Of a stretch of 64,000 bases of DNA, positions 32,501-63,723 are shown piece after piece. The notes under the pieces are model-generated. The model made no database searches. It saw only the letters and a program-made list of their open reading frames with translations, and was not told the DNA's origin. This stretch comes from Zygnema circumcarinatum SAG 698-1b (taxonomy: Eukaryota; Plantae; Zygnematophyceae). A program made the position numbers and the translations under genes. Location of the stretch: the NCBI GenBank assembly GCA_037447605.1, contig CM074817.1:682001-746000 (forward strand), read 5' to 3'. The stretch's first letter is position 1. Every line of letters begins with the position of its first letter.

Positions 32501-35500
32501 GGCTCCATCACGGAAGATTACAATTCTGCAATGGCCCTCATGGGGGCAGGTGAGGGCGCTTTGTTTTTTTCTTTTTGACCCGTTGAAATTATGAAACTAT
32601 GGGTTTTGAGGAGTGGCAGGTTTTTGTTTAGTGAAGGTTTTGTTAAGGAAAGCACAAATTGGGACGAACCATGCAGGGTTTTCCTCCATGTATTTGAATG
32701 TGAGACTCATTTACGGGCTTGCTCCGGACGATATCGACTCGGTGCTTAAGCAGCGATTGCGCTGGGCGATGGGCTCTCTGCAGGTGAGAGAGAGAAAGAT
32801 GGACAAAGGAGGGGGAGAGAGGAAAGGGTGAGAGAGTATGATGGTAAGAGAGCGAAACAGACAGACTGACAGAGCGACTCCCCTCCGGAATTATGACTTG
32901 CTCAGAGATTTCAGGGAGTTGAGAGCTGTATGTGTCAAGAAATTGCAAAATTATGTTTGGAAGTTTTGATGTCCAGATTCTAATCTTGGGGCCTTGATTT
33001 CTAGATTCTTTGTCGGGACAACCCGCTGCTGAAGCCCGGCCTCACTTTTGCACAGTCTCTACTTTTCTTCCAGTCAGCTTTTCAGGTGTGCTTGAAGCCT
33101 ACCCAAATGCGCAACCCAAAACTTTATGAACCTAAAGCCCCTAATACCAATGGCAATCTTATGGCGTGATGACGTTAGAAACCCTTCATCTGTATACTTA
33201 TTCAGCTTATTCAGCCCTTGAAGGCTTTGCGATTCTATGATGCAAACCCTAAACTCTAACACACTTATAGAGGTTCCATGTAAGGCCAAAACAACTGAAC
33301 TTCCTAAAGCAGTAACTATGCGTTTTTTAAAGTGCCACTAACCACCTAAAGTTGCTTTCTTTGCTTCGGACAGCTCCTTGTTTGATCTGGTTAGCTACTT
33401 TGGAGAGGTCTTGAAAGGTTTTGGAGGATCTTACGGTTGAGGATTTTGATTCTTTTATTTCCGGCCCGTGAAATGCAGTATGTGTTGGCCATACCGACAA
33501 TTCTGATGGCTCTTGTGCCAATCATTTACCTCTTTTTCTCCATACCCCCTATTTACGCCCCAATTTACGAGTTTTGCGCGTTTTTCTTCGCTTACTATGC
33601 GGCGAATCGATTAATGCTGTTCCACGCACACCGCGGAATACCAAATAAGGTTCAAATCGCAATCTGAACCCTATCTGGCTTGTTAATGGGAGCGAGAGGG
33701 GGGTGGAGGGAGAGGGAAGCGATTCGCTGAAGGAAGGAGAGGACAAGAAAGGGAGAGGAGCAAGAGAAAATTGGGGGGGGGGGGGGGGGGGGGGGGGGNN
33801 NNNNNNNNCGCGGGAGAGAGAGAGTTAGAGATAGAGATAGAGAGAGGAGGGTGGGGGAGGGAGGGGGAAGGGGCTAGAGGAGGGAGAAAAGGACGATGTG
33901 AGAATGATACGGTTGTTGGAGAGGGGGAGGAGGTAGGCTGTGGGTTAACTTGACTAGGCTTGACTGGACGTGACTTTACTGAACTTTGACCTGATTATAT
34001 ATCTCTGTCCAGGGTTTGGAAATGTGGAGAGGGTCCCAAATGTGGCTGTGGAATGCCCCCAACAATGTGTTGGCGTGCTGGAAAGTTTTCACCACCGAGT
34101 TTTGGATTTTCCGACTGCTGGGATTCGGCAAGGTCAGTCCAAACTACTATTTAAAGAAAATCAAAGAGAATTTACTGAAATTGGAAGTATGGAGCGGAAG
34201 TAAAACTTGAGTTGTACAACTTTAGACTTTCAAACTCTTAAAATCGGTTCTTCCTTTGCATATATTGTAAAAAACATTGATACGCTAAGAGCCATGAACC
34301 TTTCTTACTAATCCATTTGGATGTTATCGCAGATTGGATTTACTGTCACGAGCAAAGAGAAGCAGAACGATTGGAAGAAGGCGTTTCTATGTGTTTGGAT
34401 GTTCCTTTTGTACTATGCGGCGGTGATGGGTGGAGTGGCGTACAATATCGTCTATATCGTGAGGGGCGACCTCGACCAATACCAAGTTGCATCGCAGGTA
34501 TCGTCAAGATGTCTCTCTCTCTCTCTCCGTCTTTCTACTCCTTCCTGCCTACCCTTTCTCTCTCCCCTTCTCGCTTTTGTTTGCTCTCCCTAACTCTCTT
34601 TCTTTTCCCTCCCCCTTCTCTCCACCCTGCCTCCTCCCTTTTCACATCTCTCTCTCTCTGCCCCCTCGCCACTGTCATTTTCCGCACTTATCCTTCCCTC
34701 CGCTTTCCTCCCTCTCCCTCGTTTTCTCTCAACCCTTTTCCTCTATTGTCGTCAATCCCTCTCTCCCTCGCCCCTCCATCTCTCCCTTTCTATCTCTCTC
34801 TCTACCTCCGAATCTCTCTATTTTGCTCTCCCTTCTCTCTCTCTCAATCTCTCCTTCTCTTTCCATCTACCATCATCCATCCATCCATCTATCCATCTAC
34901 CTCCTCTTCCTCTCCCTCTCCCCCCCTCTCAACCTCTCCCTCTCTTTCTTGCTCCCCCTCTTTCTCCATCTCTCCCTTTTCTCTCCCCTCTTTTCCCAAA
35001 ACCTCTCCTCCTCTCTCGCCCCCTCCCTCCCCCTCTCTCTCCCTCCCTCACCCTCTCTCCCTCTCCCTCCCTCCTCTCTCCCTCCCTCTCTCTCCGCGTG
35101 CAGGCGGTGGCCCTTGCGTGGGGCCTCCTTGTGTGTCTAATGCTGCTCCCCCCTGTGGCGGTAGCCTTCCCCCTTTGGCGGCGGCCCCGCCCGGGCCGCG
35201 TCCTCTGGGAGGAGAGCCTCTCGCAGGGCGTGCCCACCCCCGCCCGCCAACCCTCGGGTGGGCTTCTAAAACCCTAAACCCCCTGCATCGTTACAATTTC
35301 AAACCCTTTGAAGTTTGGCCTGAAAAACCTCTATCCCCTTTCCCCCCGCCCCCCCTCCCTCCTCCCTCCCCTGTAAAGGTCCTGAAGCTCTAAAAACTTG
35401 AAGGCATACACAGCTCATTTCTTTTTGGGGGGTAGCAGCATTCATGCGCTCTGTCACGTCACCTCTCGCTCGGGTTGGTAATCGCCTTCGCCGAGTTGCT

Positions 35501-43685: not shown

Positions 43686-45562
43686 ATGCCTGCTTACCTG
43701 GACTGTCCTTCCTCCAAAGGGAGCGCCGGTTTGCTGTCGCCCGCTGACCTTCTGCAGCTGCTGCACGCTGAAGGCGTAGCAGGATCCTCCACCTCTGGTG
43801 TCGAGGTGCTAACCAGACGCTGCCCTGTATAGTTTGACGCATTTTTTATCTTCTCACTTTCGTCTCTTCTTTCTCTTTTGTTTGTGTTCTGTCAGCCGTC
43901 AGACTTACAAGGTGGTCTTTCCGCTCTTGAAGCTGAATCATGCACAGTTGTGCGGCTGAGCAAGCTGCATTCTTTTGTCCATAATAGTCAGGGTTTCTAG
44001 TCAATTCTTCAATCTGTAGTCACTCTGATCGTGCGCCTCAATCGGCAGTTTCTGTCGTTCTGTTTCTCCTGTTGTTCAACCTCCTGATGCCATTGAAATC
44101 CTCTGCATTAGTCGATTTACTATCTGAATTCATGAAGGAAAGCTTGCATTGCTTTTTATAGATGCTTGCAAATTAATTCCTCCATTTTCCAAATCTTATA
44201 ATTGTATTTCAAATGTTGAATGTGGCAGGACCTCCGCCGATCAGTGGACAGGCAGGCAGCAGGAACCCCCTGCACCTTCCCGGTAGCTTCGGGGGGCAGT
44301 CGGAGGAGAGCTCCGCGGCACCGCAGGAAGCACGCCCCGCGCTCGCGGCGCTGCCCTCGGGGCTGGGCTGTGACGCGACAGGTGGGAGGGAGGGAGGGGA
44401 AGGAGGGAGGGAGGGAGGGAGGAAGGAGGGAGGGAGGGAGGGAGGGAGGCAGGGAGGGAGGGAGGGAGGGAGGGCGGGAGAGAGGGGAGGNNNNNNNNNN
44501 AGGGCGGGAGAGAGGGGAGGGAAGGAACTGGGAGGGATGGGCGGAAGAGGGAAGGTGGGACGGAGGGAGGGAACGGAGGGACGAGGGACGCCAGAAGGGA
44601 GGGGAGGGAGGGTGCGGCGAATGGGAGGGAAGGAGGGAGGGAGGGAGGGAAGGAGGGAGGGAGGGAGGGAGGGAAGAGGGGGGGGAAGACAATGGGGTCC
44701 CGAGGGGAGCAAGTCGGAGGAAAAGAGGGGAATGGAGAGGGAAGAGAGATAGAGACGGAGGTTTTGAAGGAAGCGGGAGAGATGCGGAGAATTGTGGAGA
44801 GAGGCATTAACAAAAGCTCTTTACCAAGTTGCTGATAATTTTTGCCTTTTGTTTGAAAAAGCCCATAATTGAGGCGGAGGTTGGCAGAAACTTTGCAGCT
44901 GTGTCTGACACTCTTGAATGAGCTTCTCTTTTGCTCTGCTTTGCAGTATCCAGATCTCAATTGCACAGAAGCGTTCCCACTTCTAACGGTATGAATACAT
45001 TGACCCAAGGATATCTTGAAAAATATGAAAAACAAAACATAACGTATGAATGGCTTTTTCTCATTTGCTTGTAGGTCAGTTCAGCGTTTCTTGGAGGCCT
45101 TTAGAGACCGCATCTGCCTTTCACGTCATATTCCCTGTCTCGCCCACTTCCTGTCTCACTCCTGCTGCCTTTTCCTCTTCCTCTACTGCTGTCTTCTTCC
45201 CTGCACTTTTATTCTCACGCCCTTTTCGCCCTTCTCTCCCTCACCCCCTTCCCTCACCTCTCCGCACGTTCCCTCAACTTCTCCACCCTCTCTTGCTTTC
45301 CCATGGTTCCCATCTCGAGTCCTCTCTCCCTTCCTCGCCTTCTTTCTCCAGATCCTTTCTCCCCTCTCCCCTAATGCCCATTTCCTCTCCTTACCTCGCT
45401 CAATGCACGAGTTCTGCCATGAAGGACATCTATTTGTTCTCGTCTTCTCCTTCATCTTCCGCTATTTTCCCCTTTTACTGTTGTGCAGCCTATTCCAGAA
45501 GAAGAGGGAGACTCTCCCGCACCAAGTTCTGCTGCTCGTGTGGTCCTGAAACTATCCCTTAG
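43686..45562 (+). other. Putative spliced orphan ORF or multi-exon leader upstream of urease
   Basis: Phase-consistent GT-AG chain 43686-43805 | 43896-43911 | about 44229-44381 | about 44947-44988 | about 45488-45562, giving about 135 aa (MPAYLDCPSSKGSAGLLSPADLLQLLHAEG...GPETIP*). No family recognised. Confidence 0.3.
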
Positions 45563-46203
45563 TCCTGTGGCTTCGGTTTTTAGCAGCATTCCGCCAGGTA
45601 CAAATAAATATCAGATTGAGGCCACATCAAGCACTCGAAAGATCGCAGCTAAGACCACAACTTTTGCCTCGATTGCTGCACATCGGAACCGAGAAGTTCC
45701 ATTGGTCCAATACTCCAAGGCCTTATCCAGGAAAGTCGTCTTTTTCCGACGTCCGGTTCTGACTCCAAGGCGAGCTTCAAGGGTGTTCTTTAGGTGAATT
45801 CTGATCTCATACCTGACCTTGTTTACTACTTGTTCGTTTGAATGAACTGAAATTCGATGTGGAATTTGCCGATAGCAGGTGAATCGTGTTCATTGGTTTT
45901 CAGCATTAAAAGCGGCTATGATTATCTCGACAAGAAACTCAACGAGTTTTTTATATTTTCCGTGTGTTACAGGTACCCAGTCGGTCCTTTCGTCTCGAGA
46001 AGAAAACACTCTTCAGAACGGATAACTCTCGTTCGACTTCTCTCCTCTTCGTCTGTAACGACTCTTATCTGTCGAGATACTGATTTCAACAACAGACTGC
46101 AAAGATCTGGTCGCCGTCTTTCACTTCAGATAGGAGGTCAGGGGTGGTGAATGCAAGCTTGTAGCTGTCAAAACCCTAAATTCTGAGGTAACAAGTCTTC
46201 ACG

Positions 46204-49200
46204 ATGAAGCTCTCTCCAAAGGAGTTGGAGAAACTCCGTCTCCATCAGGCGGGCGTTCTCGCTCAAAAACGACTCGCTCGCGGAGTTCAGCTAAATTACT
46301 CCGAAGCAGTTGCTCTTATATCAACACAAGTGAGTGTTGATTAGTTTATAAGTTATCTGAAATGCTTTGGGAAGTTTGCCCTAAGTGGTATCTTTTTGAA
46401 TTCTCAAATCAGGTAAAGTCTTACATGGGACATTTCCCTTTATGTCGGGTTGCAGGAATTTTACTGAGAATGGTTCTCTCTTGCATGGTGTTTGCTGTAG
46501 ACGTCGTGAAATGTAACTGCCGAAATTATAACTGCTGATGGTTTCGTTTCGCAGGTTTTGGAGTTTATAAGAGATGGCAAAAGTGTTGCTGAACTTATGG
46601 ACTTAGGGAAGCAGCTGCTTGGAAGGTACTTAAAGCCCAAAAAGGCCCTTGTTTACTTTGTTCCTTTTAAGAAACAGACTCACTCGTAAAACTTAGTCTT
46701 AAGAGTAGCACCTTTGCTCTGTGAAGCCCACCTGTATTAACCTTCCAAGTTTTCGGAAAATCCATTTTTTGGCTTCGTTAGGTTTGTCATTGTCAATTGT
46801 CAACCAGCCTTTTATATCTATGTCCACAAAACACAGAATGTGCATATTTTTTTGCTGTTTTTTTGGCAGGAGCAATGTGCTGCCCGCCGTACACTCCCTC
46901 CTGCACGTGGTGCAGGTGGAGGGGACTTTTCCGGATGGGACAAAACTGGTCACCATTCACCATCCCATTTCTCGCGAATCCGGAGACCTCAGCCTCGCAC
47001 TTTACGGCTCTTTCCTGCCAAGTACAATACCTCTGCTTAAAAAACCAACAGAAAAAGAAAAGAAGAGAGATTTTTAATCAGATTTAATCTGTTTCTGGAT
47101 GCACAGCCGTTCACCCTCCTGCGTTTTTTTTTTTTCGTTTTTTTTTCTTGTCGTTGCAGTTCCCACTGCAACCGTTCCTTCCTCTTCAACGGAGCAAGTT
47201 AGCGCAGGCTCTATCATTACTCCGGCAAGTTCTATTGTGCTCAACAAGGGCCGGAGAGCGGTCAGACTCACAGTCTCTAATAAGTGCGATCGTCCCATTC
47301 AGGTAAAGGCTCCAAGAAGTTAACCCAATACGTTCTTTCTTTGGAGATAAACGGCTGAGAGTAAAAGAGGAAGTGAAGCTTTGGAAAGGCAGTTTCAAAA
47401 GCAACTAGCAGTTTACAGAATAGAGAGATTTTTTCCTCATTCAGCAATCTGTTGCCTCTCCTCCTCTCACAACCACTCATTACCAACCCTAAAGGCAACT
47501 CGACATTGTTCATTACGCAGATTGGCAGCCATTACCACTTTGTGGAGACCAACCCCTACCTTGTTTTCGACCGGGCATTGGCCTACGGCCTACGCCTTAA
47601 CATTCTTGCAGGCACTGCTGTCCGCTTTGAGGTCAGCTCTCCCCGGACTCTCTCCCATACCTTCTCACACTTCTTCCAGTGAGTATGTCTTTTGACCTGC
47701 GCTCAATCCAACATACTTCTGCAACGGTGCACGGAATAAGCCCACTTCCCTACTTTTCTGCTGATGCTAGAATCCCTAGAATGTCTCATTTTTTTCTTTT
47801 TCTGATGTTATTATTTTATGGGTCTGCAGCCCGGTGATTCGAAAACCGTAGTGCTGGTGGAGATTGGAGGAAAGAAGGTGATCCGGGGAGGAAACAGCCT
47901 TGCAGATGGGCCAGTTTCAGCTGAAGCAATTCCTGCTCTTATGGAAAAGCTTTTGGCAGCCAATTTCGGGCACATATCGCAAGCCAATGCTTTGTGAGTC
48001 TATCCTTTTACAGGTCATCCCTTACATTTTTGAAAGCTATTAATTCATTTTTCCTGCTCCGGAGGACTCTGTCTCAATCGATATGATACCGATTGCGAAA
48101 CTCTTGAAACTGATTCACATTAAGGTTGTCTATGCAGAGAGGGAGTGGTAGGAGAGGTGGCTGCTCTGACTACCACAGTAGAAAGAGAGCAGTATGCTGC
48201 TGTGTTCGGGCCCACAGTGGGAGATAAGGTGCAGTTGGGAGACACGCAGCTGATGGCAGAGGTGGAACGGGACTTCACTGTGTATGGAGACGAGTGCAAG
48301 TTCGGAGGGGGCAAAGTCCTGCGAGAGGGCATGGGCCAGGTGGGATGCAATCAATATAAGAAACCCTAAATCCGTTCTACAACAGATCCATACTCACACC
48401 GCTTCTGCAGAGCCATAAGTTCAAATTTGACCAATCACAGAATAGGTTTGCCCTCTTCACAACAATAGGTCAGATGATATCTTTGGAAGCAATTTTTTCA
48501 TACAATTCAACAGTGATCGGTACAAATCACTTATCTGAAGCCGCCCAAACAGGATCGCCCTATTGTTAGGTCCATTTGCTGGACCAACTATGATGATACA
48601 AATGGTTGTTGGTTTGCAACATTCAAAGACTGAAACTGTGATTGTTGTGATTGTGATTGTTGTGATTGGCAGGCGGCGGGAGTCGGCGCAGCGGATGTTT
48701 TGGACACAGTGATCACGAATGCGCTCATAATTGACTACACAGGAATCTACAAAGCGGACATCGGCATCAAGGGCTGCCTCATTGCTGGTCTCGGAAAGGC
48801 CGGCAATCCGGATGTCATGGATGGGGTTACGCCCGGCATGGTGGTTGGGGTATGCCTTCTTTCCTGCATTCTCCAATTTGCAAATTGTTTTGTTAAAGAT
48901 TTGCTTAAAAAGTGTTGCAAATTTACAAAAAGTTGTAATTCTGCAAGCGCAAAACATGCAAATTGCAGGCATTGCAAATTAAAGTTAGCAGCTATTTCAG
49001 ACAGTGGCGGGAAGTGATAGAAGCTGTGGAAGGTAGTACGTCTGGGAATTGAGGTTATGATTTCTGCATCTAGAACTATGAATGCAGCGTATGTTTTGCT
49101 TGGTGTTGCTCCTTAGGTGCCACATGATGTCTTATTTTTTATTTTCTTGAATACTGTTTGGGCAGGTGAACACTGAAGTGATCGCGGGAGAAGGTCTGAT

Positions 49201-52200
49201 CATAACTGCGGGAGGGGTGGATACTCACATTCATTTCATTTGCCCTCAGCTCGCAGACGAGGCCATTTGCGGAGGTATCTCTCTCTCTCTCTCCTTCCTC
49301 TTTTCCTTTTGTTGTGCATGTGACTCAACAACTCAAAGCCTACATATACAAGCTATGTATATACAGCCTTTTTCTCACAACTTATGGTTTTTTGAGCTCG
49401 CTGTGGACCCCTTTCCCTCGTTTACGATATTCGCAAATTCACTCTGATTCACTTCAAATTCTGAAAAGAACCCATTTCATGATCCTTGTTTGCGGTTTCT
49501 GGTTGTTCGTTTGTTGTGTTCTATGCAGGTCTGACAACGCTGGTTGGAGGAGGCACCGGCCCCGCCCACGGCACTATGGCCACCACCTGCACTCCCTCGC
49601 CCGATCACATGAAGTTCATGCTGCAGGCAACAGACGATATGCCTCTCAATATTGGGTTTACTGGCAAGGTATGCTGTTTCTAATCAGAAAGCCTTTAAAG
49701 AAAAAAGGGAAGGGGGGGGGGGAGGGGAGAAAGAATCTTCGCAATAAAACTGATCTCCCAAAGGTGACTCGTTTTGCTGTTTCGTATATCCCTTTCCTTC
49801 GGTTCTGAGAGAGACAGTGCATCAAATTGAGCAGTCCCAAGATATACAGAGTGCAGAAGTAGTACTAGTTACAGAGCTTTAGGTTTTGCAGATCCATGAC
49901 GAGGTGTAACGAGCTGTGTATATGCGAGAAATTTGCAATTTTCTTTTTTCTTTTTTCGTTTTTTTCTTGGAGCAGGGAAATACGTCGAAGCCAGAGGGGC
50001 TCGGCGAAGTGATCATTAGCGGAGCCATTGGGCTGAAGCTGCATGAAGATTGGGGGACCACACCCGCGGCTATCGACAACTGCCTCAGTATCGCTGATCA
50101 GTTCGATATTCAGGTCAATATCTTGCTGCAAAAGTTTGAAAGCTTGTTCTATTTCACGACTAACAGTAAACCACAAAGTCGTAACTTCAAAACAGCTTAC
50201 CTCAGAAATCCAAGCACCAAAACCAAATGTTGATGGGTTTGAAAAGTATCTCCTTCTGTTGGGTTATGCAGGTCACTATTCACACCGACACTCTGAACGA
50301 GTCGGCCTGTGTGGAGCACACTATCGCCGCCTTTAAAGGCCGTACGATTCACACGTATCACAGGTAGCCGCCTTTTCCCACACAAAAGTATGCCTTTCAT
50401 TCCGTCCCTTTGATTCCCATTTTTCGCCCATGGGGTCCTTGAGTAGTTGATTGAATGTTTGAATTTCCGGCGGGCGAACAGTGAGGGTGCAGGAGGAGGG
50501 CACGCCCCTGACATTATCAAGATATGCAGCGAGCCCAATGTGCTGCCGTCCTCCACAAATCCGACTCGCCCCTTTACAAAAAACACCATCGATGAGCATC
50601 TTGACATGCTGGTGGGGGACATTTCCCCCCCCATGCCTCCTTTCTTTACTCTGCATCCCTTACTTTTGCATGCAAATAGCGGATCTTTTGCAACCGGTTT
50701 TTTTTTTTTTGGTCAACATGGCTAGATGTAATTTAAGGGCGGTTTTTGGGGTACCCTATGTGAATTCATGCTTGATGCCCCATCTTGCAGATGCAAGGTA
50801 GTGAGTCTTTCCTGATTTGTAACGTTTTAAAGCATTTTTTTTTTCGCATGGTTTTAGATGGTCTGCCACCACTTAGACTCCGAGAACAAGGAGGATGTTG
50901 CTTTTGCGGAATCACGAATTCGCGCGGAAACCATCCGAGCCGAGGACATTCTGCATGACATGGGGGCCATCAGCATGATGTCATCCGACTCGCAGGCGAT
51001 GGGCCGCATAGGCGAAGTAGGAGACTCCTGCTTGTCTTTCTGTGCTCTTGTTTTTAGGTTTCAATTTTGAAAGTTACCATAGACGTTTTGATTTTTTTGT
51101 TTTTCATCCCTGGCATCGCATCAATTGACAGTTAAAACCCTTGGAGTTTCAAGTTTCAAAGCTCCGGAAACGTTGATTATTTCCTGGAGAGCCTCAGGCT
51201 GTGGGGATATTTAGGCCTTAAAATCCCTAAAAGCGGCCAATTCTCGTCCATTTTCTGCGCAGGTGGTGACTCGGACATGGCAGACGGCTCACAAGATGAA
51301 GGTCCAGCGCGGGCCGCTCCTCGAAGATAAAGATGCAGGGAACGATAATTTCCGTATCAAGCGCTATGTGGCAAAATATACGATCAACCCGGCAATAGCA
51401 CATGGATTTGGGCATCTTGTTGGGTCTGTGGAGGTGGGCAAAATCAACCTTATCCTTCGTTCTCTCAATCTTATCACAATTTGGGACTGTCACCTCCCTC
51501 TCGCTCTTCCTCGCCCTCGCCCTCGTCCGACGTATCAAAACTCCTCAATTGGAGAATCTGTGGAAGATCTTCAGACGTTTGTAGGATGGTAGAATCCTCC
51601 ACATGTTTGACATGTTTTGCATGTTTGGAAGGTCTGATGTCTCAAAAGGTTACATGGTTTGTTGGTTTTTGGGGGAAAACCAGGTTGGAAAGTTAGCGGA
51701 TTTGGTGCTATGGCAGCCCGGATTCTTTGGGGCAAAGCCGGAAATTGTGATGAAGGGAGGAGTCATATCGTGGGCCCAAATGGGAGACGCCAATGCGAGC
51801 ATTCCTACGCCAGAGCCGGTACATTCTAAAAAGAAAAGAATTCCTGTAACCTAGTGACTCATCATAACAACTCCCAAATTTTGGAAAATTTCTGGTCCTT
51901 CTTGAGAAGAATTTCGGATCCTTGGCTTCAGTTCTGGGGATACTCAAGGTTTCGAAGCGCCTTTGATTGGTTGAAATTACAGTTTTTGACAGGTTTATTG
52001 AAAAGCATTCGGAAGAGAAGCTGAAAGTAGGAGAAGAGAGAATGAACGGAGTTGAAAAATCAACCAAGGGAGAACAGGATGTTTGAAGTGGGTTTTCTGG
52101 CTTTTTTTTGTGGAAAAAGCGCACTTCTGGTAACTTTTTTGGCGGTTTTTGGTGAGATCTGTCGCAGGTTATTATGCGGCCTCAGTTTGGAGCTCTCGGG

Positions 52201-52597
52201 AAAGCTGTGGGCCCTCGCTCCTACGCATTTGTCAGCAAGGTATGAAAATATGCTCCTTTACATTTCGAATGATTAAAAAAACCTAAACGCCAAAAACTCT
52301 GAAAGCCCTAAAAAATCTCATTGCAGGAAGCTGTGCATGCAGCTCATGCCACATCCTGCTTGATGCAATGTGCAGGCATGTTTGGATGCCGGAAAAGCGA
52401 CGGAATATGGAATTACTAAAACTGTGGCAGCAATACAGAATGTACGGAAGTTGGGCAAAAAGGACATGAAACTAAATGATGCCATGCCCGCCATTGTGGT
52501 TGATCCGGAAACGTACAAAGTGACGGCGGACGGAGTCGAGCTTGTTTGTGAGCCGGCGGAGCAGCTTCCGCTGACGCAGAACTACTTCCTCTTCTAG
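46204..52597 (+). CDS. URE: Urease (eukaryotic single-chain gamma-beta-alpha fusion), many exons
   Basis: [27 protein letters not shown]..., [22 protein letters not shown]|[96 protein letters not shown], ending [10 protein letters not shown]. The Ni-ligand His, carbamylated Lys and Asp motifs are intact. Confidence 0.98.
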
Positions 52598-52781
52598 TGT
52601 ATTCTGCATAGAGGGGGTTCAGGGTTGGTGGGTTTGTTTGGATTTTTAGGGTTTTGGGAACACGCGGTAGAGGGTGGGGTCAGACTACGGGAGGGAGCAT
52701 ACGCATAACTTCTGGCAGTAGTAGTTGGAGTCAGGTGAAGGCTTGTTTTAATCTTAGGTTTGTTCGGACGTTTTTCTCAAC

Positions 52782-53768
52782 ATGATGGGTGGAGGCAAAA
52801 ACACGGGCGATGTCGGAATTTCACAGTCATTGCCCTCTGATTGGGCCACGTGGCAGCTTCTAGACTCTCTCCTTCCAACGGGAGGCTTTGCGCACTCGTA
52901 CGGACTGGAATCTGCTCTGCAAGCAGGGCTTATAGGGGGCTCAGGGGGACTCGAAAACTTCATCGTCACTGCTTTGGAAAATACAGGGAGCTTGGTCCTT
53001 CCGTTTCTATGTGCAGCTCATCAAAGTGCACAGTTGCATTTAGCGGAACTGCAGCAGGCAGAGCAGCATGGAAACGAAGACTTAGAACAAGGACGACAGC
53101 AAACTGAAAGGGGGAATGCATGGAGTCCTGCAGTTAGGAGATGGGTCGTAACGGATTCAATACTGAACGCAGCTCTGAGCAATCATGTAGCTCGGAGGGC
53201 TTCCACAGCACAGGGAGGTGCTCTTCTGAGGCTTGCTGTCAGTGTATTTCCAGAAGCCTCTTTACTTAAAGATATGCGAATTCGAACTCGAAAAGGAGGA
53301 GATAAAGGAGCAGATAAATTGCAGCATCGTGGAGGGGAAGTGGAGTATAGAAATGACATTATTGCTGGAGAGATAAGTAACAGCTCCAGTAACGGTAAGG
53401 GTGACAGTTCCAGTTCAGTTATGTCGGAAACAAGTGACAGCCTATCCGAGTGCGACACCTGGCCGGTTTCAATGCACCATGCTCCCATATTTGGAACAAT
53501 TTGTGGGACAGTTGGAATTGATGTTTTAGTGACTCAAAGGTCCTACCTCTTCACTGCTCTTCGAGATATGCTCTCTGCAGCCACGCGACTGAATGTGATT
53601 GGTCCGTTGGAATCAGCAACTCTGCAAAGAAAATTGGCTCCTTTGGCCGAGAAAATTTTACTGCAGTCGGCAAATCGGCCAATCTCATCTGCTTATCAAA
53701 TTGCGCCTCTTTTCGACCTCGTGCAAGGAAGCCATGATAGCTTGTTTTCTCGCCTTTTTTCTTCATAG
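52782..53768 (+). CDS. UREF: Urease accessory protein UreF, intronless CDS, 328 aa
   Basis: WQLLDSLLPTGGFAHSYGLESA..., LNAALSNHVARRASTAQGGALLRLA, HHAPIFG, YLFTALRDMLSAATRLNVIGPLE, DLVQGSHDSLFSRLFSS* (plant UreF C-terminus). Confidence 0.95.
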   Translation: MMGGGKNTGDVGISQSLPSDWATWQLLDSLLPTGGFAHSYGLESALQAGLIGGSGGLENFIVTALENTGSLVLPFLCAAHQSAQLHLAELQQAEQHGNEDLEQGRQQTERGNAWSPAVRRWVVTDSILNAALSNHVARRASTAQGGALLRLAVSVFPEASLLKDMRIRTRKGGDKGADKLQHRGGEVEYRNDIIAGEISNSSSNGKGDSSSSVMSETSDSLSECDTWPVSMHHAPIFGTICGTVGIDVLVTQRSYLFTALRDMLSAATRLNVIGPLESATLQRKLAPLAEKILLQSANRPISSAYQIAPLFDLVQGSHDSLFSRLFSS

Positions 53769-53916
53769 TGGGGGCTTTCAGGCGCTACGGAAATTTTAGG
53801 GTTAAACTCCAGTGACTCTTCACGGTACTTGGGTGGGTTTCAAAGTCATTTACAGTTGAGATTTTTCCTTTTTTCTGAATAGAAGTAGCACAGGAATAGG
53901 GTAGCAGGGCAGGAGA

Positions 53917-56417
53917 ATGGAGGACAGCATGAATTCTGCACTGCGGGATGTTCTGGACGGGAAGGCTGAGGGAGAGGAGGTCATGAAAGTGGGAGCCTTA
54001 GAGATGGAGATGGTGAGAGGGAGGACTGTGGCGACACGTGTGATGGGAAAGTACCCATTGAAATTCATGGTACCCTCTAAGGTGAAGGCCCAACTCCTTT
54101 CAATTCTTTTCGTATTTTTATCATAACTTGATTTGATGATTTGCCGAGCTAACGGAATCCTCTGCCTTTGCATGTCTGAGAAGACGGGATATGGATATGT
54201 TCTACGATTTGTAGGGAGATGAGAGAGAGGGAACGGTGGGAATGGGACGAGGGGGAGAGAGAAAGCGAGGGGGTTCTGAAGGGAGGAAAGGTCAGAGGGA
54301 AGGTGGAGGGAAGCGGTAAATGCAAGAGAGTAAGAGCGAGAGAGAGAGAGAGTTATAGCTAGCTAGCTAGCTAGCAGCTGTCATGAAATACAAAGTGCAG
54401 GAAATACCAGTAAATAGGATAGTAATAATAGGTAAATACCATTAAGTACCAGGAAATACACTGTGCTATCCTATAACTCCTTTCTGAAGGGTGCGAGCTA
54501 TTGAATTCAGCAGTTTTTCTGTGTTGTTTTGTTTCAGGTCGCACGTGCGGGAGTGGATGCTGTGTGGGTGTATGTGATAACGTATGGAGGAGGAATTGTG
54601 TCCGGCGACGCTGTCGCCTTCACTCTCACTGTGGGCACAGGCTGCACGGGAGTGCTCACCACACAGGCCTCCACAAAGGTGCGCCAATTCCCTTCCTATT
54701 CCCTTCTCAAGGAAGAGGAAGATGAGAGGGAGTGGAAGGAGGGAGGGAGAAGGTAGACGGGAGGTAGCGAGGCGTGGAGGTCACAGAAAGTGGGATGAAA
54801 GCGTGGGGGGGGGGGTGTTGGGGAGAGGGAGGAGAGATGGAGAGGAGAAACATGTTAGAGAGATAGAGAGGTGGGGAGAGAGAGGCGGAGGGAGGCAGAG
54901 AAGAGGGGAGCACGATGATGAAACGAGTCTATCAAAAGTGTTTCAAGACGGAGCTGATATCTGATGTGATGCGCTCGTCTGAGTGGCTCTCCCTCCCTCC
55001 CTCCTTGGCATTAGGGTTTAGGGGGTAGCAGGGCCTTTCGAACTTAATTTGAGACTCTCAAATTAAGAGAGTCAATCGAGTTTTTTTTGGAGTTACGTAC
55101 GGCATGTTGAACAGACTCACTTCTTTTCTGCATTTGTTAATACCACAGGCTATTCATATTGACCCTTTCTTTGTACTTGATCGCTCCTACCCGTGCCCCC
55201 ACACTCTCTCTCCTGCAGATCTACCACTCCAGTGAGGGAAAAAACGCACAGCAGAGACTAGATGCTGTTGTACGCGACGGAGCCCTGTTGGCAGTTCTAC
55301 CAGACCCTGTCACATGCTTCCGTGATGCGAAATACGTGCAGGATCAGACCTTCAAACTTGCGCCAGGTGGCAGCCTCGTATTGGTCGATTGGCTCACCAG
55401 TGGCCGGCGGGAACGAGATGAAGTTTGGGCCTTCGACTCGTACTTGAGCTCGAACAGTGTCCTTGTAGAGGGCCGGCCTCCTCTCCTCTTGGATAAGGTG
55501 AGAGATTTTGCCTCTAATTGAAAACCATAAAGTCCTGAAAAGCCTAAGGGTTTCGTTCTCTTTTTGAGCTTCTAAGAACTGACTCTTTCTCTCTCTCTCC
55601 CTCTCTGTTGAACAGGTCAACCTCAGTACAAATGGCGCCTCCTCCGTAGCAGAGCGCATGTGTGGGCTGCATGTGGTTGGCCTTGTGGTGCTCTGCGGGT
55701 GAGTGATAGGGAGAGAAAGGTACCCTAATCTAACGCTGAATCTTCACAATGCTGAACCCTGATAACATGGAAACTAAACTTTGAAGCCCTACAATTGCTT
55801 TGAAACCCTAAAGTCTTGTCACGTGCATGCAGGCCGCGAGTGAAGGACACGTGGAAGAGTATGGAGGCTGCAGCCAATGGCGTGGCTCGAGCCTCTCTGG
55901 GGAGAGGGAGATCCCGGGGACAGATGGCACGCACAACCTCGGAAGCTTCTGAGAAGGATCCGGTTGAAGGGAGACTGTGGGCCTCGTGCAGCGTGATTGG
56001 GACCACGGTGATGTTTCTCAGCCTCTTTAAATCACAGTATTCGTCTCCCTTTCGTTTACTTTATTTTTTTCTGTTTTCGTTGTATATGTTGCATCTTGGC
56101 AGGCGATTCGTCGTGTTTACCCTGCAGCACGTTTCTCCCAAAACCTGGCTGTCCATGTAGAGCCCTAGCAGAAGCCTGATCCAAAGAGCCAACGCTTTTT
56201 GGAAGAATGAACGATCTCGACTGTACTTTTACCTCTATGGCGATGTGAAACAGCACTGAAACTGAAACTGACGTATGAACTTTGAAACCTGCAGGGAGAG
56301 GCCCTTCTTGTGCGTCTGGCAGCCGCCACGACGGAGACGGTGTACAAATTTCTGAGAGCTCATCTTGCTCCATTGTCTTCCCAGTTGGGCGCTGAACCTT
56401 ATGCTTCATTAGGCTAA
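53917..56417 (+). CDS. URED: Urease accessory protein UreD, 6 exons
   Basis: KYPLKFMVPSK | VARAGVDAVWVYVITYGGGIVSGD...LTTQASTK | IYHS...LAVLPDPVTCFRDAKYVQDQTF...VLVDWLTSGR...W.F..Y.S | ... | GEALLVRLAAATTETVYKFLRAHL...GAEPYASLG*. Plant UreD motifs. Confidence 0.93.
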
Positions 56418-57441
56418 AACATACCCCCCCCTCAATGGTAAAGACAGTCCGGCCTGTTGCATAATGCACGACAAACCGGTTTTTTTAGGGTTTTTAGGGT
56501 TTTCTCATCTACACATGTGCTTGCTGCAGAAAAGTTACTGACTTTGTGTGAAGGTTTTGGGTCATGAAATAATGGAGACGGGACCGTGGTTTTAGGAGTG
56601 AGACCTTGCTTTAAGGTATCATCAACTGAACATGTGATGGTGCGGACGAGCACGGAACTGGCCTTTTTTTGATTTGGACTCTCTGTGAACTGCGACTGAT
56701 ACACGCCGCCTTTTGATCTTGTTCTTTATTCTGCTTCCTCTCCTTGCTCGTTCAGCCATTTGCCTTTGGCCATTCGGTCGCCCGGCCGTTAGGGCGTTGT
56801 GGACTTAAAAATCGTCATCAGTACTCAAAGGGGAAACTTCCGACAATCTGATACCAAAATGCATACTCAGGACACATAGCGATCAGCCTGCAAAAGAGTA
56901 CTTCCCACAAACAATCTTTAGTACTACTGAAGACTAATCCTCCATTCGATTTTGAGAAGTCTGGCATGCCCTATTGTGAGGTTTCTAAGTTTACTTTTTG
57001 TGTTTTAGTTTCTATTTTTTTTTCTTTTTCATCAGCCTTTGCTCAGGCATACCTTGCAGTTGAAGAACTTTAAAAAATCGTCGATGCTAGCCTTGAACGG
57101 AGCGACATGCGTGAATTGAGGTCGGTATTGCCGATACGAAATCGCCGTACCGTATCGTATCGTATTGTACATGCCAATACTGTTGGTGAGCGGATCGCCG
57201 ACAAACCGGTGCCTATCTGCCAGCGCAGCAAAGTGTGACACGTGGCCCAGTCAGTTTGTCCCAAATTTACAACGCTGCCCTATTACCGAACTTTTCACTG
57301 TCAGTTGCACATGGAGCCTGCCTCCCCTGTCCCCGTCAGCAGCTGACCTGTCAGATCCGATGCTACGTCACGCGGTCGGCGAGCCCAGCAGGGCCGTGGG
57401 AGAGGTGACAATTTGGGGAGGGAGAGAGGAAGGCCCAGGCC

Positions 57442-60400: not shown

Positions 60401-63400
60401 GTTCAGGGTGTTCTGCACACCACGGGAGGGTACATGGTGTATACCGCCACAACGTTTAAATACGCATTTGACTACCGACCAGGAGATGTTTATTGGTCAG
60501 TTTCTGCATAGCCCTAAAAGCCTGATAAAATCTTAAAATACTGAAAATTCTTAAAACTCGATATGTTCCAAAAAACCGAAACTCTGGCAGCCCTACAACC
60601 CCTACGAGTCTTGAAAAAGGTGGAATTTTTGAGGAACATGGAACTCGGAATACTGTGAGGGTGGACATTCTAACGGAACTGCCGCACATAGAACCGCAGG
60701 TGCACTGCTGACTGCGGATGGATCACCGGCCATTCCTATGTGGCGTACGGTCCGTTGGTCAACGGAGCTACAGTTCTGTTGTACGAAGGAATTCCAAATT
60801 ATCCAAATTGGGGGCGGACATGGGAAATTGTGGACCGCCATAAAGTTAATATTTTCTATACGGCCCCGACCGCGATTCGGGCTCAAATGCGGGCAGGAAA
60901 CGAGGTTGGAAATGCTTGATTTTGCCAAATGCTAAAAAAGAAAGATTTGCAATCGTGAACCTTGAAATTTTGTCACGAGGAAAGGTGGGGGAGGATAGAA
61001 GAGGGAATGTGGGAGCGGGTCAAAGAAGGGAGGGTGGGAGAGAGAGAGAGCGGGTGAGGGAGGTAGTGCTAAACACTTATATGGAGGTATGATGCAGTTC
61101 GTGCGGCGCTATTCGAGGTCATCTCTCAGAGTGTTGGGAAGTGTGGGGGAACCGATCAACCCCGCAGCATGGAGGTCCGTTGAACTGAAACTGAACTGAG
61201 ACAGCGATCTGGAGGTTGAATAAACGGTCAGAGATTCACATGTGAATGCCTTTTTATGGCCAGGAAGCAAGTGAAGGAATTTTGGAGCTCCCAAGAAAGT
61301 CACTTGTAGAAGCAGTAGTGTCAAAACCCTGACGACGCGAATGCTGAGTGATTCCATGTACCGATTTCTGTTTGCTCAGGTGGTACTATGAGGTTGTAGG
61401 CGATTCACGCTGTCCTATTTCTGACACATGGTGGCAAACTGAGACTGGCGGATTCATGGTATGGTCCCTCATCCTCTCTTATTCCCCGCCCCTCTCTCCT
61501 TCTCCCTCTCTCTCTCTCTCTCACTCTCTCTCTCTCTCTCCCTCTCTCACTGTCCCCTCTCTCTCTTTCTTTCTCTCTCTCTTCGTCTGTCGGCCTTCAC
61601 TCCCCCGAAATTTTGAAAGCCTTCTGAAGCACCATTCGCTCCCAAAACTCCCAAGCCCGAATAGAGAGAGGGATTAACTGGGCGAAGGATATGGGCTCGC
61701 AGTTGACTCCTCTACCGGCGGCATGGGGGCTGAAGCCGGGCTCTGCGACTCTGCCCTTCTTTGGAGTGCAGGTAGGCCTCCCGCCCCCTCCTCTCCCCCA
61801 CTTCTACCTCCCTTCCTCCCCTCCCTCCCAACCCCCCTCCCTCTTCCCCCCCCTCCCTCTCTCCCTTCCCTTCCTCCCCTCCCTCCCTCCTTCCCCTCCC
61901 TCCCCTCCCTCTTTTCCACCCCTCCCCCCCTCCTTCCTCTCTTCCTCCCCTCCCTCCCTCTTGCCCTCCCCTCCCTCCCTTCCCCCTCCCTCCCCTCCCT
62001 CTCTCCCACCCCCCCTAGCCTCCCTTTCTTCCTCCCCTCCCTTCCCCCTCCCTCTCTCCCTCCCCTCTCTCCCTCCCCTCCCTCCTTCCCCTCCCTCGCG
62101 ACCCCTCCCCCCTCCCCTNNNNNNNNNNCCCTCCCTCCCTCTCCCCCCTCCCTCCCTCCCCTCCCTCCCTCCCTGCCCCAACAGGAGGTGCCTTGGGGGG
62201 TTGGGCCTGCAGCCTGCCGTGGTGAGTGCATTGGGCGAGGAGCAGGCGGGGCCCTGCGCGGGCCTCCTCTGCCTCAAGGCCGCGTGGCCCGCCGCCTGCC
62301 GCACGCTGCACGGGGACCACGCGCGATACGAGGCCACGTCGGCACATAAACCCTAAACCCTAACCACGTCAACACTGTATAACTCTTCTTGAAGTCTTTG
62401 TGTCTATGACTGTGAGGGTGAATTTGAGGGTTCGCGAGAGTCCCCAAGCCTTTGTTGTTAGGGTTTTAGGGTTTTGGGCTTACGAGTGCTTCCCTGCTGC
62501 TCCTCTGCAGCTACTTCGCGCCCTTCAAGGGCTACTACTTCAGCGGGGACGGATGCAGAAGGTGACTAGTCTGTTCCACTGCCTTTTTTTTAAGGCCTCT
62601 GAACTTTCATGACCCTTTTTAACCACCCTTGCGACCTTTTACGCAGTTCTGCTGTTGATGCGGTGTTAGGCGAGTACATGTGAAGCAGATTCTATGCTTG
62701 TTAACCCTTCCGTTGAACGGATGCAAAATTTGTAACAGGGACAAGGATGGCTACTATTGGCTGACGGGCCGTGTGGATGACGTCATCAACGTCAGCGGCC
62801 ACCGCATTGGCACCGCCGAGGTGGAATCCGCCCTCGTCGCGCATCCACTTTGCTCCGAGGCCGCGGTCGTGGGGGTGGATCACGAGGTGGGTGGAACCGT
62901 GCTGACGTAAGCGCCATGCATGTCAACGTCATCACTGCTCACCACCTTCTGTCGTTGCTGCTGCTGACGTCATCAACTCGTTGCTATTGCCATCACCATT
63001 GTCGCTGACAGTGTCGTTATTGCTGACATCATCCACAATCCTCGTTCTCGTTTCCAGCGTCATCATCGTTGTTGTTATTCAGAGGAACATGGACTACGAC
63101 TCAACCCCAATGTCTGACAACACTATCAAAACCCTACTTCTTTTTTTTTTTTTGAGGACCTTAGATGAGCCAAGCATTGAAGCAAGAGGGCGGGGGGAGG
63201 GTTCAGATCAAAGGGCAGGGAATCTACGCCTTTGTGACGATTCTGGAAGGGCACGAGTACAGCGACGAGCTCAGACGGAGCCTTGTTCAGACTGTGCGCG
63301 CACAGGTGCGAACGGGCTCCGAAAAAACGTCTTTCTCAGCCTTAGTGTGAACGCCTCAGAGTTAGGCCAATAGGCGACGACTTCTACTTGCAGAAAAATC

Positions 63401-63623: not shown

Positions 63624-63723
63624 NNNNNNNNNNNNNNNNNNNNNNNNNNNNNNNNNNNNNNNNNNNNNNNNNNNNNNNNNNNNNNNNNNNNNNNNNNNNN
63701 NNNNNNNNNNNNNNNNNNNNNNN
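63624..63723. other. 100-N scaffold gap; 10-N gaps also at 1859-1868, 33799-33808, 44491-44500, 62119-62128
   Basis: N runs read directly; the 10-N gaps sit in G/C homopolymer or microsatellite sequence. Confidence 1.

What the first reader, a model, noticed from the sequence alone, without database searches (positions are those of the whole stretch)
52598..53916. Spacers of the urease cluster look like introns, suggesting a polycistronic transcript
Seen: spacer 1 has GT donor candidates 20-70 nt after the urease stop (52617, 52624, 52667) and a pyrimidine tract with AG (TTGTTTTAATCTTAG, 52756-57) 25 nt before the UreF ATG. Spacer 2 has CACG|GTACTT at 53825, a T/C tract (ATTTTTCCTTTTTTCTG) and several AGs (53881-53907) before the UreD ATG. 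There is little room for a poly(A) site plus promoter. A strong CAG|GTGAAG donor at 52735 is too close to the nearest AG and could instead splice past UreF to the UreD acceptor. Established: polycistronic mRNAs occur in green algae. Inference: one pre-mRNA may yield urease, UreF and UreD by splicing and leaky scanning. Alternative: each spacer has a TTTAGGGTT telo-box (52645, 53795) that could mark a tiny independent promoter.
Basis: inference. Interest (0 to 1): 0.8.

Follow-up and report, generated by a model that had tools for sequence, protein, structure and literature searches.

The report
Co-transcribed urease gene array, spacers unspliced
The two short gaps between the urease, UreF and UreD genes of this land-plant-related green alga are not introns but stay in the RNA, and the genes, together with a previously unnoticed upstream gene, form a tight array that RNA assemblies cross in one piece in several related algae, which looks like a rare operon-like unit in a nuclear genome.

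Summary
In four RNA data sets from three studies, one assembled contig removes all flanking GT..AG introns yet runs unbroken from 52374 to 54079, through spacer 1, UreF and spacer 2. The spacers are therefore retained, not spliced.

Continuous transcription is supported. Intron-free RNA contigs of three other streptophyte algae carry urease-UreF(-UreD) collinearly. The Klebsormidium nitens genome and two further contigs keep the same order, and in two of them the UreF stop lies only 5-7 nt from the UreD ATG.

A fourth, unannotated cistron (ORF0, 228 aa, 44220-46150) ends 53 nt before the urease ATG. It is conserved under purifying selection and has no ATG after its start. That is the leaky-scanning signature of chlorophyte polycistrons.

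Urease carries 51 ATGs and UreF 17, so leaky scanning cannot serve UreF or UreD. Both spacers are ATG-free and weakly structured. Contigs cannot prove single molecules, so nested or overlapping mRNAs remain a live rival.

An earlier scan note (s1-343939) flagged the same cluster on this same window, not on other DNA.

The parts
44220..46150 (+). ORF0, a new upstream cistron of 228 aa. Exons: 44220-44381, 44947-44988, 45489-45793, 45973-46150. It is an orphan, predicted disordered, and has no ATG in any frame after its start codon.
   Evidence: tblastn/tblastx against the relative's RNA contig. Exon model and translation. 52% aa identity, codon-position differences 84/64/127, pN 0.35 against pS 0.75. 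0 ATG in 684 nt against 9 expected. No Pfam, homolog or atlas match. pLDDT 49. The exon 1 boundary and the start codon are inferred, not seen in reads.
46151..46203 (+). Spacer 0 (53 nt) between the ORF0 stop and the urease ATG. It holds one ATG (46151), which opens an 11-codon mini-ORF, and a reverse telo-box at 46172-46180.
46204..52597 (+). Urease CDS: 18 exons, 838 aa, 17 GT..AG introns of 118-349 nt.
   Evidence: Spliced model built against the relative's urease, 717/838 identical. The last three introns are confirmed as joints in RNA contigs, and the intron ending at 51262 by the upstream-exon sequence that precedes 51263 in the contigs.
52598..52781 (+). Spacer 1 (184 nt). It is retained in RNA, has 0 ATG and is not unusually structured. 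It carries a sense telo-box at 52645-52653 and one consensus-grade but unused donor-like site at 52735.
52782..53768 (+). UreF, intronless, 328 aa, with a low-complexity insert; 17 ATGs after its start codon.
53769..53916 (+). Spacer 2 (148 nt). It is retained in RNA, has 0 ATG and folds less stably than shuffles (z +2.06). Sense telo-box at 53795-53803.
53917..56417 (+). UreD CDS: 6 exons (53917-54081, 54538-54678, 55219-55497, 55616-55698, 55833-56007, 56295-56417), 321 aa.
   Evidence: Four of the five introns are listed as GT..AG joints in RNA contigs; the 55498-55615 intron follows from the adjoining contig pieces of X4. ORF check. Pfam UreD.
56418..56854 (+). Sequence after the UreD stop that the same RNA contigs cover (contig ends at 56602-56854), with two sense telo-boxes at 56484-56501. 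The next gene's ATG is about 1 kb downstream, at 57442.

Best explanation
The spacers are retained inter-ORF segments, not introns. They belong to a conserved, co-oriented array ORF0 - urease - UreF - UreD that is transcribed continuously. Most likely it is one transcription unit that gives a polycistronic RNA.

Shown: RNA contigs cross both spacers unspliced while all neighbouring introns are removed. The same collinear RNA is seen in three other species. Order and tight spacing persist across deep divergence.

Inferred: ORF0 and urease are expressed from one mRNA by leaky scanning. ORF0 has a weak start context (T at -3 and at +4) and no further ATG, as in Chlamydomonas-type bicistrons. UreF and UreD cannot be reached by leaky scanning. 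They are translated either by reinitiation after scanning the ATG-free, weakly structured spacers, or from shorter nested RNAs that begin near the spacers. Which of the two applies is not resolved here.
For: One search covers 4 runs from 3 studies. In each run one contig runs unbroken from 52374 to 54079 with 0 mismatches. GT..AG joints are removed on both sides (51431/51682, 51817/52167, 52237/52374, 54079/54536, 54676/55217, 55697/55832, 56006/56294). The X4 contig is 5900 nt. It extends about 916 nt upstream of the urease ATG, so it includes ORF0.

the relative's intron-free RNA contigs carry ORF0 -115 nt- urease -313- UreF -248- UreD; two more species have ORF0-urease-UreF on RNA contigs; the K. 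nitens genome has an ORF0-like segment, then urease -283- LipB-like -128- UreF -206- UreD, all on one strand; two further contigs have the UreF stop 5-7 nt from the UreD ATG.

ORF0 has 0 ATG in 684 nt (P 1e-4). The relative's leader has 0 in 773 nt (P 7e-6). Spacers 1 and 2 have 0 ATG in both species (15 expected in total); a 586-nt leader with 0 ATG in a fourth species; spacer fold z-scores are -0.3, +1.05 and +2.06; spacer CpG o/e is 0.74 and 0.45, against 1.4-1.6 in the promoter-like island at 57000-57200.

Inter-ORF lengths match chlorophyte polycistrons, whose median in Chlamydomonas is 183 nt (PMC11291117).
Against: Assembled contigs cannot show that one molecule carries several ORFs. 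Overlapping same-strand mRNAs would assemble identically, as the tool's own caveat says.

Urease (51 ATGs) and UreF (17 ATGs) block leaky scanning. Reinitiation after ORFs of 838 or 328 codons has no precedent that I know of.

UreD introns downstream of the urease and UreF stops should make a long polycistronic RNA a target of nonsense-mediated decay. Read-through polycistronic RNAs in Arabidopsis are suppressed in that way (PMC9768141, abstract).

In X2 and X3 the mean depth rises from 14-18 on urease contigs to 36-42 on the UreF-UreD contigs. That fits extra downstream start sites as well as it fits 3' bias.

No cap, poly(A) or long-read data could be examined.
Confidence: 0.6

Rival explanations
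1. Three or four separate but overlapping or nested transcription units. Each gene has its own start site within the 3' end of the upstream gene or in the spacer, possibly marked by the telo-box. Upstream transcripts read through or end inside the next gene. Short-read assembly merges them into one contig, and each ORF is translated as the 5'-proximal ORF of its own mRNA.
For: ATG-free runs of 295 nt before UreF and 180 nt before UreD are what 5' UTRs look like; the relative shows 429 nt before UreF and at least 217 nt before UreD, and K. nitens 397 nt before UreD. Neither urease nor UreF shows ATG depletion. Depth steps up 5' to 3' in X2 and X3. A telo-box sits in each spacer and in the relative's spacer 1. 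itself warns that a contig across two genes shows no single transcript.
Against: With 5-7 nt between UreF and UreD in two taxa, the UreD start site would have to lie inside the UreF coding sequence. The spacers lack the CpG-rich character of the promoter-like island before the next gene. At depth ~500 (X1) no contig break, loose end or branch was reported in either spacer, though 11 loose ends were not shown and assemblers clip tips. Sense-strand telo-boxes also follow the last stop (UreD), where no array gene follows, so they need not mark promoters.
Confidence: 0.33
2. The spacers are facultative introns, or a donor at 52735 splices past UreF, so that alternative splicing of one pre-mRNA makes distinct mRNAs.
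For: One consensus-grade donor at 52735 (score 8.6 against a real median of 6.0). The spacer lengths fall within the local intron range of 118-565 nt.
Against: No joint lies within or across a spacer in any of 4 runs, while all true introns are removed. The other candidate sites score below the real medians, and one strong GT in 28 is the chance expectation. Relatives' RNA contigs also retain their spacers. Removing a spacer downstream of a stop codon would not help translation of the next ORF. Contigs drop rare isoforms, so a minor spliced form is not excluded.
Confidence: 0.04
3. A nematode- or kinetoplastid-type operon: a polycistronic precursor is cut into monocistronic mRNAs by spliced-leader trans-splicing and coupled polyadenylation in the spacers.
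For: Short co-oriented spacers and weak acceptor-like AGs before the UreF and UreD ATGs.
Against: No loose ends (foreign 5' leader or poly(A)) were reported at the spacers, and the contigs are unbroken there. To my own knowledge spliced-leader trans-splicing is not known in green plants or algae; I did not search for this.
Confidence: 0.02

Closest known systems
Nuclear polycistronic (mostly bicistronic) loci of chlorophyte green algae: Chlamydomonas reinhardtii, Chromochloris zofingiensis, Auxenochlorella protothecoides (Gallaher et al. 2021, PMC7896298; leaky-scanning study PMC11291117)
   Same: [quoted passage not shown] Inter-ORF spacers of tens to a few hundred nt (Chlamydomonas median 183 nt; here 53, 184 and 148). 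Collinearity is conserved between species. The ORF0-to-urease pair shows the diagnostic ATG depletion of everything between the first start codon and the second ORF, and a weak first start context.
   Different: This lineage is a streptophyte alga; my literature search found no report of nuclear polycistrons there. The array holds up to four cistrons. They are functionally related: an enzyme plus its maturation factors. Two of the upstream ORFs are long (838 and 328 codons) and are not ATG-depleted, so the accepted leaky-scanning mechanism cannot serve UreF and UreD. Single-molecule evidence (Iso-Seq) is missing here.
Bacterial urease operons (ureABC with ureD/E/F/G)
   Same: The structural urease and its accessory genes UreF and UreD are adjacent, co-oriented and apparently co-transcribed. 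In two related contigs the UreF stop and the UreD start are 5-7 nt apart, as in translationally coupled operon genes.
   Different: These are nuclear genes with spliceosomal introns: 17 in urease and 5 in UreD. The urease is a fused single chain of plant type, and its nearest homologs are plant and streptophyte proteins. UreG and UreE are not in the array. An orphan ORF0 lies upstream. There is no evidence of recent transfer.
Read-through polycistronic transcripts of Arabidopsis, suppressed by nonsense-mediated decay (PMC9768141)
   Same: Long RNAs that span neighbouring co-oriented genes, with introns downstream of the first stop codon.
   Different: Here the spanning RNA is the dominant assembled form in every run examined, and the arrangement is conserved across distant species. 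That argues against an accidental by-product.
Land-plant urease system (URE, UreD, UreF, UreG as dispersed single genes; from my knowledge of Arabidopsis, not tested here)
   Same: The same proteins. UreF and urease are most similar to plant orthologs.
   Different: In land plants the genes are unlinked. Here and in other streptophyte algae three of them form a tight collinear array.

Membership tests
Spliceosomal intron (applied to spacers 1 and 2) | Removed from mature RNA | tested here: not met
   Contigs of 4 runs from 3 studies retain 52598-52781 and 53769-53916 in full while removing all flanking introns. Rare isoforms are not excluded.
Spliceosomal intron (applied to spacers 1 and 2) | Donor and acceptor of local consensus quality, at a workable distance from each other | tested here: not met
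   Scoring used a matrix from 25 local introns. Only the donor at 52735 reaches the real median, and it lies 22 nt from the nearest downstream AG. All acceptors fall below the real median of 8.6.
Green-algal nuclear polycistronic locus (Gallaher type) | A single mature capped and polyadenylated mRNA molecule carries two or more separate ORFs | tested here: inconclusive
   Spliced RNA contigs bridge all cistrons here and in 3 other species. Contigs are not single molecules, and no long reads could be laid.
Green-algal nuclear polycistronic locus (Gallaher type) | Inter-ORF distance far shorter than between ordinary collinear genes | tested here: met
   Spacers of 53, 184 and 148 nt, against about 1 kb to the next gene's ATG. 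Chlamydomonas bicistronic median is 183 nt, against 3415 nt for monocistronic neighbours (PMC11291117).
Green-algal nuclear polycistronic locus (Gallaher type) | ATG depletion of ORF 1 and the spacer upstream of ORF 2 (leaky scanning) | tested here: met
   This row covers the ORF0-to-urease pair only. 0 ATG in 684 nt of ORF0 (P 1e-4); 0 in 773 nt in the relative (P 7e-6); 0 in 586 nt in a fourth species; 2 in about 890 nt in a third.
Green-algal nuclear polycistronic locus (Gallaher type) | ATG depletion upstream of the downstream ORFs UreF and UreD | tested here: not met
   Urease has 51 ATGs (38.6 expected) and UreF 17 (17.3 expected). The relatives are likewise not depleted. Only the spacers themselves are ATG-free.
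Green-algal nuclear polycistronic locus (Gallaher type) | Collinearity conserved between species | tested here: met
   The window organism plus three species at RNA level, and K. nitens plus two further contigs at DNA level.
Green-algal nuclear polycistronic locus (Gallaher type) | Independent translation of each ORF (proteomics, Ribo-seq) | not testable with these tools
   No proteomic or ribosome-profiling data are accessible.
Telo-box-marked plant core promoter | AAACCCTA/TAGGGTTT close to a mapped transcription start site | tested here: inconclusive
   The motif is present in each spacer but no start sites are mapped. The same sense-strand motif follows the UreD stop inside transcribed sequence, and it is frequent in introns.
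Spliced-leader trans-spliced operon | A common leader added at an acceptor upstream of each downstream cistron | tested here: not met
   No loose ends were reported in the spacers and the contigs are unbroken there. Contig data only, so this is a weak test.

The most novel reading that the evidence does not exclude
Streptophyte algae keep an ancient nuclear 'urease operon'. One mature mRNA encodes an orphan leader protein (ORF0), urease, UreF and UreD. All four are translated from it. ORF0 and urease use leaky scanning. UreF and UreD use efficient reinitiation, or another cap-independent route, after very long ORFs, across ATG-free, unstructured spacers that carry a sense AGGGTT(T) element. 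That would be a mode of eukaryotic polycistronic translation not covered by the chlorophyte leaky-scanning model.
Probability: 0.25. Interest if true: 0.85.

Novelty: new variant of a known kind. Interest (0 to 1): 0.62.

Why it matters
Nuclear polycistronic mRNAs are documented in chlorophyte algae. There they usually pair a short, ATG-poor first ORF with a second ORF. This array sits in the lineage leading to land plants. It groups an enzyme with two of its own maturation factors, as a bacterial operon does. Its order has held from Klebsormidium to the relatives of this alga while synonymous sites saturated. It also includes long, ATG-rich upstream ORFs that the accepted leaky-scanning mechanism cannot bypass.

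If single molecules carry these ORFs, the locus becomes a test case for how eukaryotic ribosomes reach downstream cistrons. It would also bear on when land plants lost such units.

The analysis also exposes an unannotated conserved protein-coding ORF that probably gates urease translation. Public RNA data for these algae make the question directly testable.

Tried and rejected
- Looking up the window's UreF by exact sequence to retrieve full RNA contigs: not on record with either ATG.
- ORF0 function: no Pfam match and no homolog by word-indexed search. A profile search of 1.84 billion representatives returned only the ORF0 of L013, which is itself a row of the query profile, plus low-complexity hits. 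The atlas gave nothing above noise. AlphaFold gave pLDDT 49 and pTM 0.15, so it is probably disordered.
- RNA elements in the spacers: no Rfam match at E<=1 and no excess structure, so an IRES-like or processed-RNA reading has no support.
- Spacer alignment across five taxa: nothing is conserved beyond the last urease codons and a telo-like motif.
- Identifying the relatives from run accessions in the literature: no hits.
- Supplement of Gallaher 2021 for urease loci: not held. Literature on a urease polycistron or cluster in algae: nothing relevant.
- The second run search, meant to compare urease-only expression with UreF/UreD, returned a different set of runs, so no comparison was possible.
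- The contig break in X3 at 52940-52961 was considered as an internal start site. I rejected this because it lies downstream of the conserved UreF N-terminus.

Full report
**Layout.** The region is a eukaryotic nuclear locus with spliceosomal introns. On the + strand a multi-exon urease CDS ends with TAG at 52595-97. An intronless UreF ORF runs from 52782 to 53768 (328 aa, Pfam UreF E 1.9e-20). A multi-exon UreD starts at 53917 (Pfam UreD on exons 2 and 3). The spacers are therefore 184 nt (52598-52781) and 148 nt (53769-53916). The next gene downstream, which looks like an acetyl-CoA synthetase, has its ATG near 57442, about 1 kb after the UreD stop at 56415-17.

I built full gene models against a relative's proteins. 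Urease has 18 exons (46204-52597, 838 aa, 717/838 identical to the relative). UreD has 6 exons (321 aa).

**Check of the observation.** I built donor and acceptor matrices from the 25 real introns of the locus. Leave-one-out medians are 6.0 for donors and 8.6 for acceptors.
- The acceptor at 52757 scores 4.1, and the best spacer-2 acceptors score 5.3-5.6.
- Only CAG|GTGAAG at 52735 (8.6) is consensus-grade.
- About 5% of exonic decoy GTs reach the real median, so one such site among the 28 GTs in the spacers is the chance expectation.

The telo-box TTTAGGGTT occurs 24 times in the window against 0.49 expected, introns included. It is a genome-wide enriched motif rather than a marker special to these spacers.

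**RNA evidence.** Seven runs of the same organism hold 96-99% of the sampled words of 52300-54100. These are Logan contigs, not raw reads.
- In each run one contig lies on 52374-54079 without a mismatch or gap. That stretch is the last urease exon, spacer 1, UreF, spacer 2 and UreD exon 1.
- The same contigs skip GT..AG introns on both sides, with joints at 51431/51682, 51817/52167, 52237/52374, 54079/54536, 54676/55217, 55697/55832 and 56006/56294.
- No joint falls inside or across a spacer.
- The X4 contig is 5900 nt. From the exon model it reaches about 916 nt upstream of the urease ATG.
- Contigs end between 56602 and 56854.

So the spacers are not removed from the dominant RNA, and they are transcribed contiguously with both neighbours. 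The limit is explicit. Contigs can merge overlapping mRNAs, they have no strand, and they drop rare isoforms. In X2 and X3 the mean contig depth rises from 14-18 on urease pieces to 36-42 on the UreF-UreD pieces. That fits 3' bias and it fits additional downstream start sites.

**Relatives.** The best UreF homologs are unnamed transcript contigs.
- One relative (56% UreF identity, five runs) has intron-free RNA contigs. They carry a cut upstream ORF, then 115 nt, urease (838 aa), 313 nt, UreF, 248 nt to the UreD ATG, UreD, and about 500 nt of trailer.
- A second species carries ORF0 (270 aa) -99 nt- urease -416 nt- UreF on RNA contigs.
- A third species carries a 586-nt leader, urease, 368 nt and UreF.
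- The Klebsormidium nitens genome has urease -283 nt- an intronless LipB-like gene (Pfam LplA-B_cat 2e-45) -128 nt- UreF -206 nt- UreD, all on one strand.
- Two further genomic-looking contigs have urease-UreF-UreD with the UreF stop only 5 and 7 nt from the UreD ATG.
- Some other UreF contigs, probably from land plants or other taxa, show no such neighbours.

The nearest named ureases to the relative are Spirogloea muscicola (77%) and K. nitens (75%). The organisms are therefore streptophyte algae, in line with the earlier notes of the scan.

**A fourth cistron.** The relative's contig has 773 nt before the urease ATG without a single ATG in any frame (11.8 expected, P 7e-6). It contains a long open frame that matches the window at protein level.

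In the window this gives ORF0 (228 aa; exons 44220-44381, 44947-44988, 45489-45793, 45973-46150). It ends 53 nt before the urease ATG.
- Against the relative it is 52% identical, with codon-position differences 84/64/127 and pN 0.35 against pS 0.75. That indicates purifying selection on a protein.
- After its start it has 0 ATG in 684 nt (9 expected, P 1e-4).
- Its start context is weak, with T at -3 and T at +4.
- Homologs sit upstream of urease in the two other transcriptome species. A weak match (E 0.035) precedes the K. nitens urease, whose ATG follows 537 ATG-free nt.
- ORF0 is an orphan and predicted disordered.

This is the published signature of leaky-scanning bicistrons in chlorophytes (PMC7896298, PMC11291117). 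The first exon and the start codon of ORF0 are inferred, not observed in reads.

**What this means for UreF and UreD.** Urease has 51 ATGs after its start and UreF has 17, neither depleted.

The spacers themselves are ATG-free here and in the relative: 0 observed against about 15 expected over four spacers. The ATG-free run extends to 295 nt before UreF and 180 nt before UreD. The spacers fold no better, or worse, than shuffles (z -0.3, +1.05, +2.06). They have no Rfam match and are not conserved in sequence apart from a telo-like motif.

These properties suit any leader that 40S subunits must scan. That holds whether scanning follows termination (reinitiation) or starts from the cap of a shorter nested mRNA.

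The spacers have CpG o/e of 0.74 and 0.45, like introns (0.54). The promoter-like island before the next gene reaches 1.4-1.6. This is weak evidence against autonomous promoters in the spacers.

The 5-7 nt UreF-UreD spacing in two taxa leaves no room for a promoter between those genes. It argues that at least UreF-UreD is ancestrally one unit.

**Verdict.** The intron reading is rejected for the dominant RNA. Continuous transcription of a conserved ORF0-urease-UreF-UreD array is well supported. A true mature polycistronic mRNA is the most economical reading (about 0.6). Overlapping or nested mRNAs remain a serious rival (about 0.33).

The ORF0-to-urease pair fits the known chlorophyte mechanism. 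The UreF and UreD steps do not, and that is the interesting open point.

I found no report of nuclear polycistrons in streptophyte algae, or of a urease polycistron, in the searchable library. That is absence in that library only.

An earlier scan note (s1-343939) had flagged the cluster on this same window.

Noticed in passing
window 44220-46150 (+): An unannotated conserved ORF0 (228 aa, 4 exons) lies directly upstream of urease. It has no internal Met and no out-of-frame ATG. It carries the motifs RHRRKHAPRS, LKLSLSP and TFAS, is an orphan and is predicted disordered. It may act as a translational gate for urease.
   Followed up: yes
window 52621, 52648, 53798, 56487, 56496; L001, L004 and L015 spacers: Sense-strand AGGGTT (the telo-box core) occurs 15 times in 3.6 kb of inter-ORF spacers and post-stop sequence across species, against 1 antisense and about 2.3 expected. 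Most lie within 2-130 nt after a stop codon, including after the last gene UreD. In the introns of the locus the antisense orientation dominates (5 against 2). It may be a 3'-UTR or termination-linked element rather than a promoter mark.
   Followed up: partly
L015 18270-18926 (K. nitens DF236964.1): An intronless LipB/LplA-like octanoyltransferase ORF (218 aa) sits between urease and UreF in Klebsormidium, with spacers of 283 and 128 nt. The array seems able to take up an unrelated cistron.
   Followed up: partly
window 46151-46186: An ATG immediately after the ORF0 stop (TGAATG) opens an 11-codon mini-ORF that ends 17 nt before the urease ATG. It is the only ATG between the ORF0 start and urease.
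   Followed up: no
window 52940-52961: In run X3 the RNA contig breaks inside UreF with a 22-nt overlap. Mean depth is 18 upstream and 42 downstream. The cause is unknown: a coverage dip, an isoform or bias.
   Followed up: partly
window 44491-44500 (also 1859-1868, 33799-33808, 62119-62128, 63624-63723): These are runs of N (assembly gaps). The one at 44491 lies inside the GGAGGGAGG-rich first intron of ORF0, so that intron's length is uncertain.
   Followed up: no
window 53270-53470 (UreF residues ~165-230): UreF carries a low-complexity Ser/Gly/Lys-rich insert of about 70-80 aa relative to the Pfam model and to plant orthologs. The relatives' UreF proteins are also lengthened (354 and 379 aa).
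   Followed up: no
window 54330-54380 and 54700-54900: GA-rich and TAGC-repeat low-complexity tracts in UreD introns 1 and 2 attract unrelated contigs and false joints in the read layout (54350/54983 and 54353/54857).
   Followed up: no
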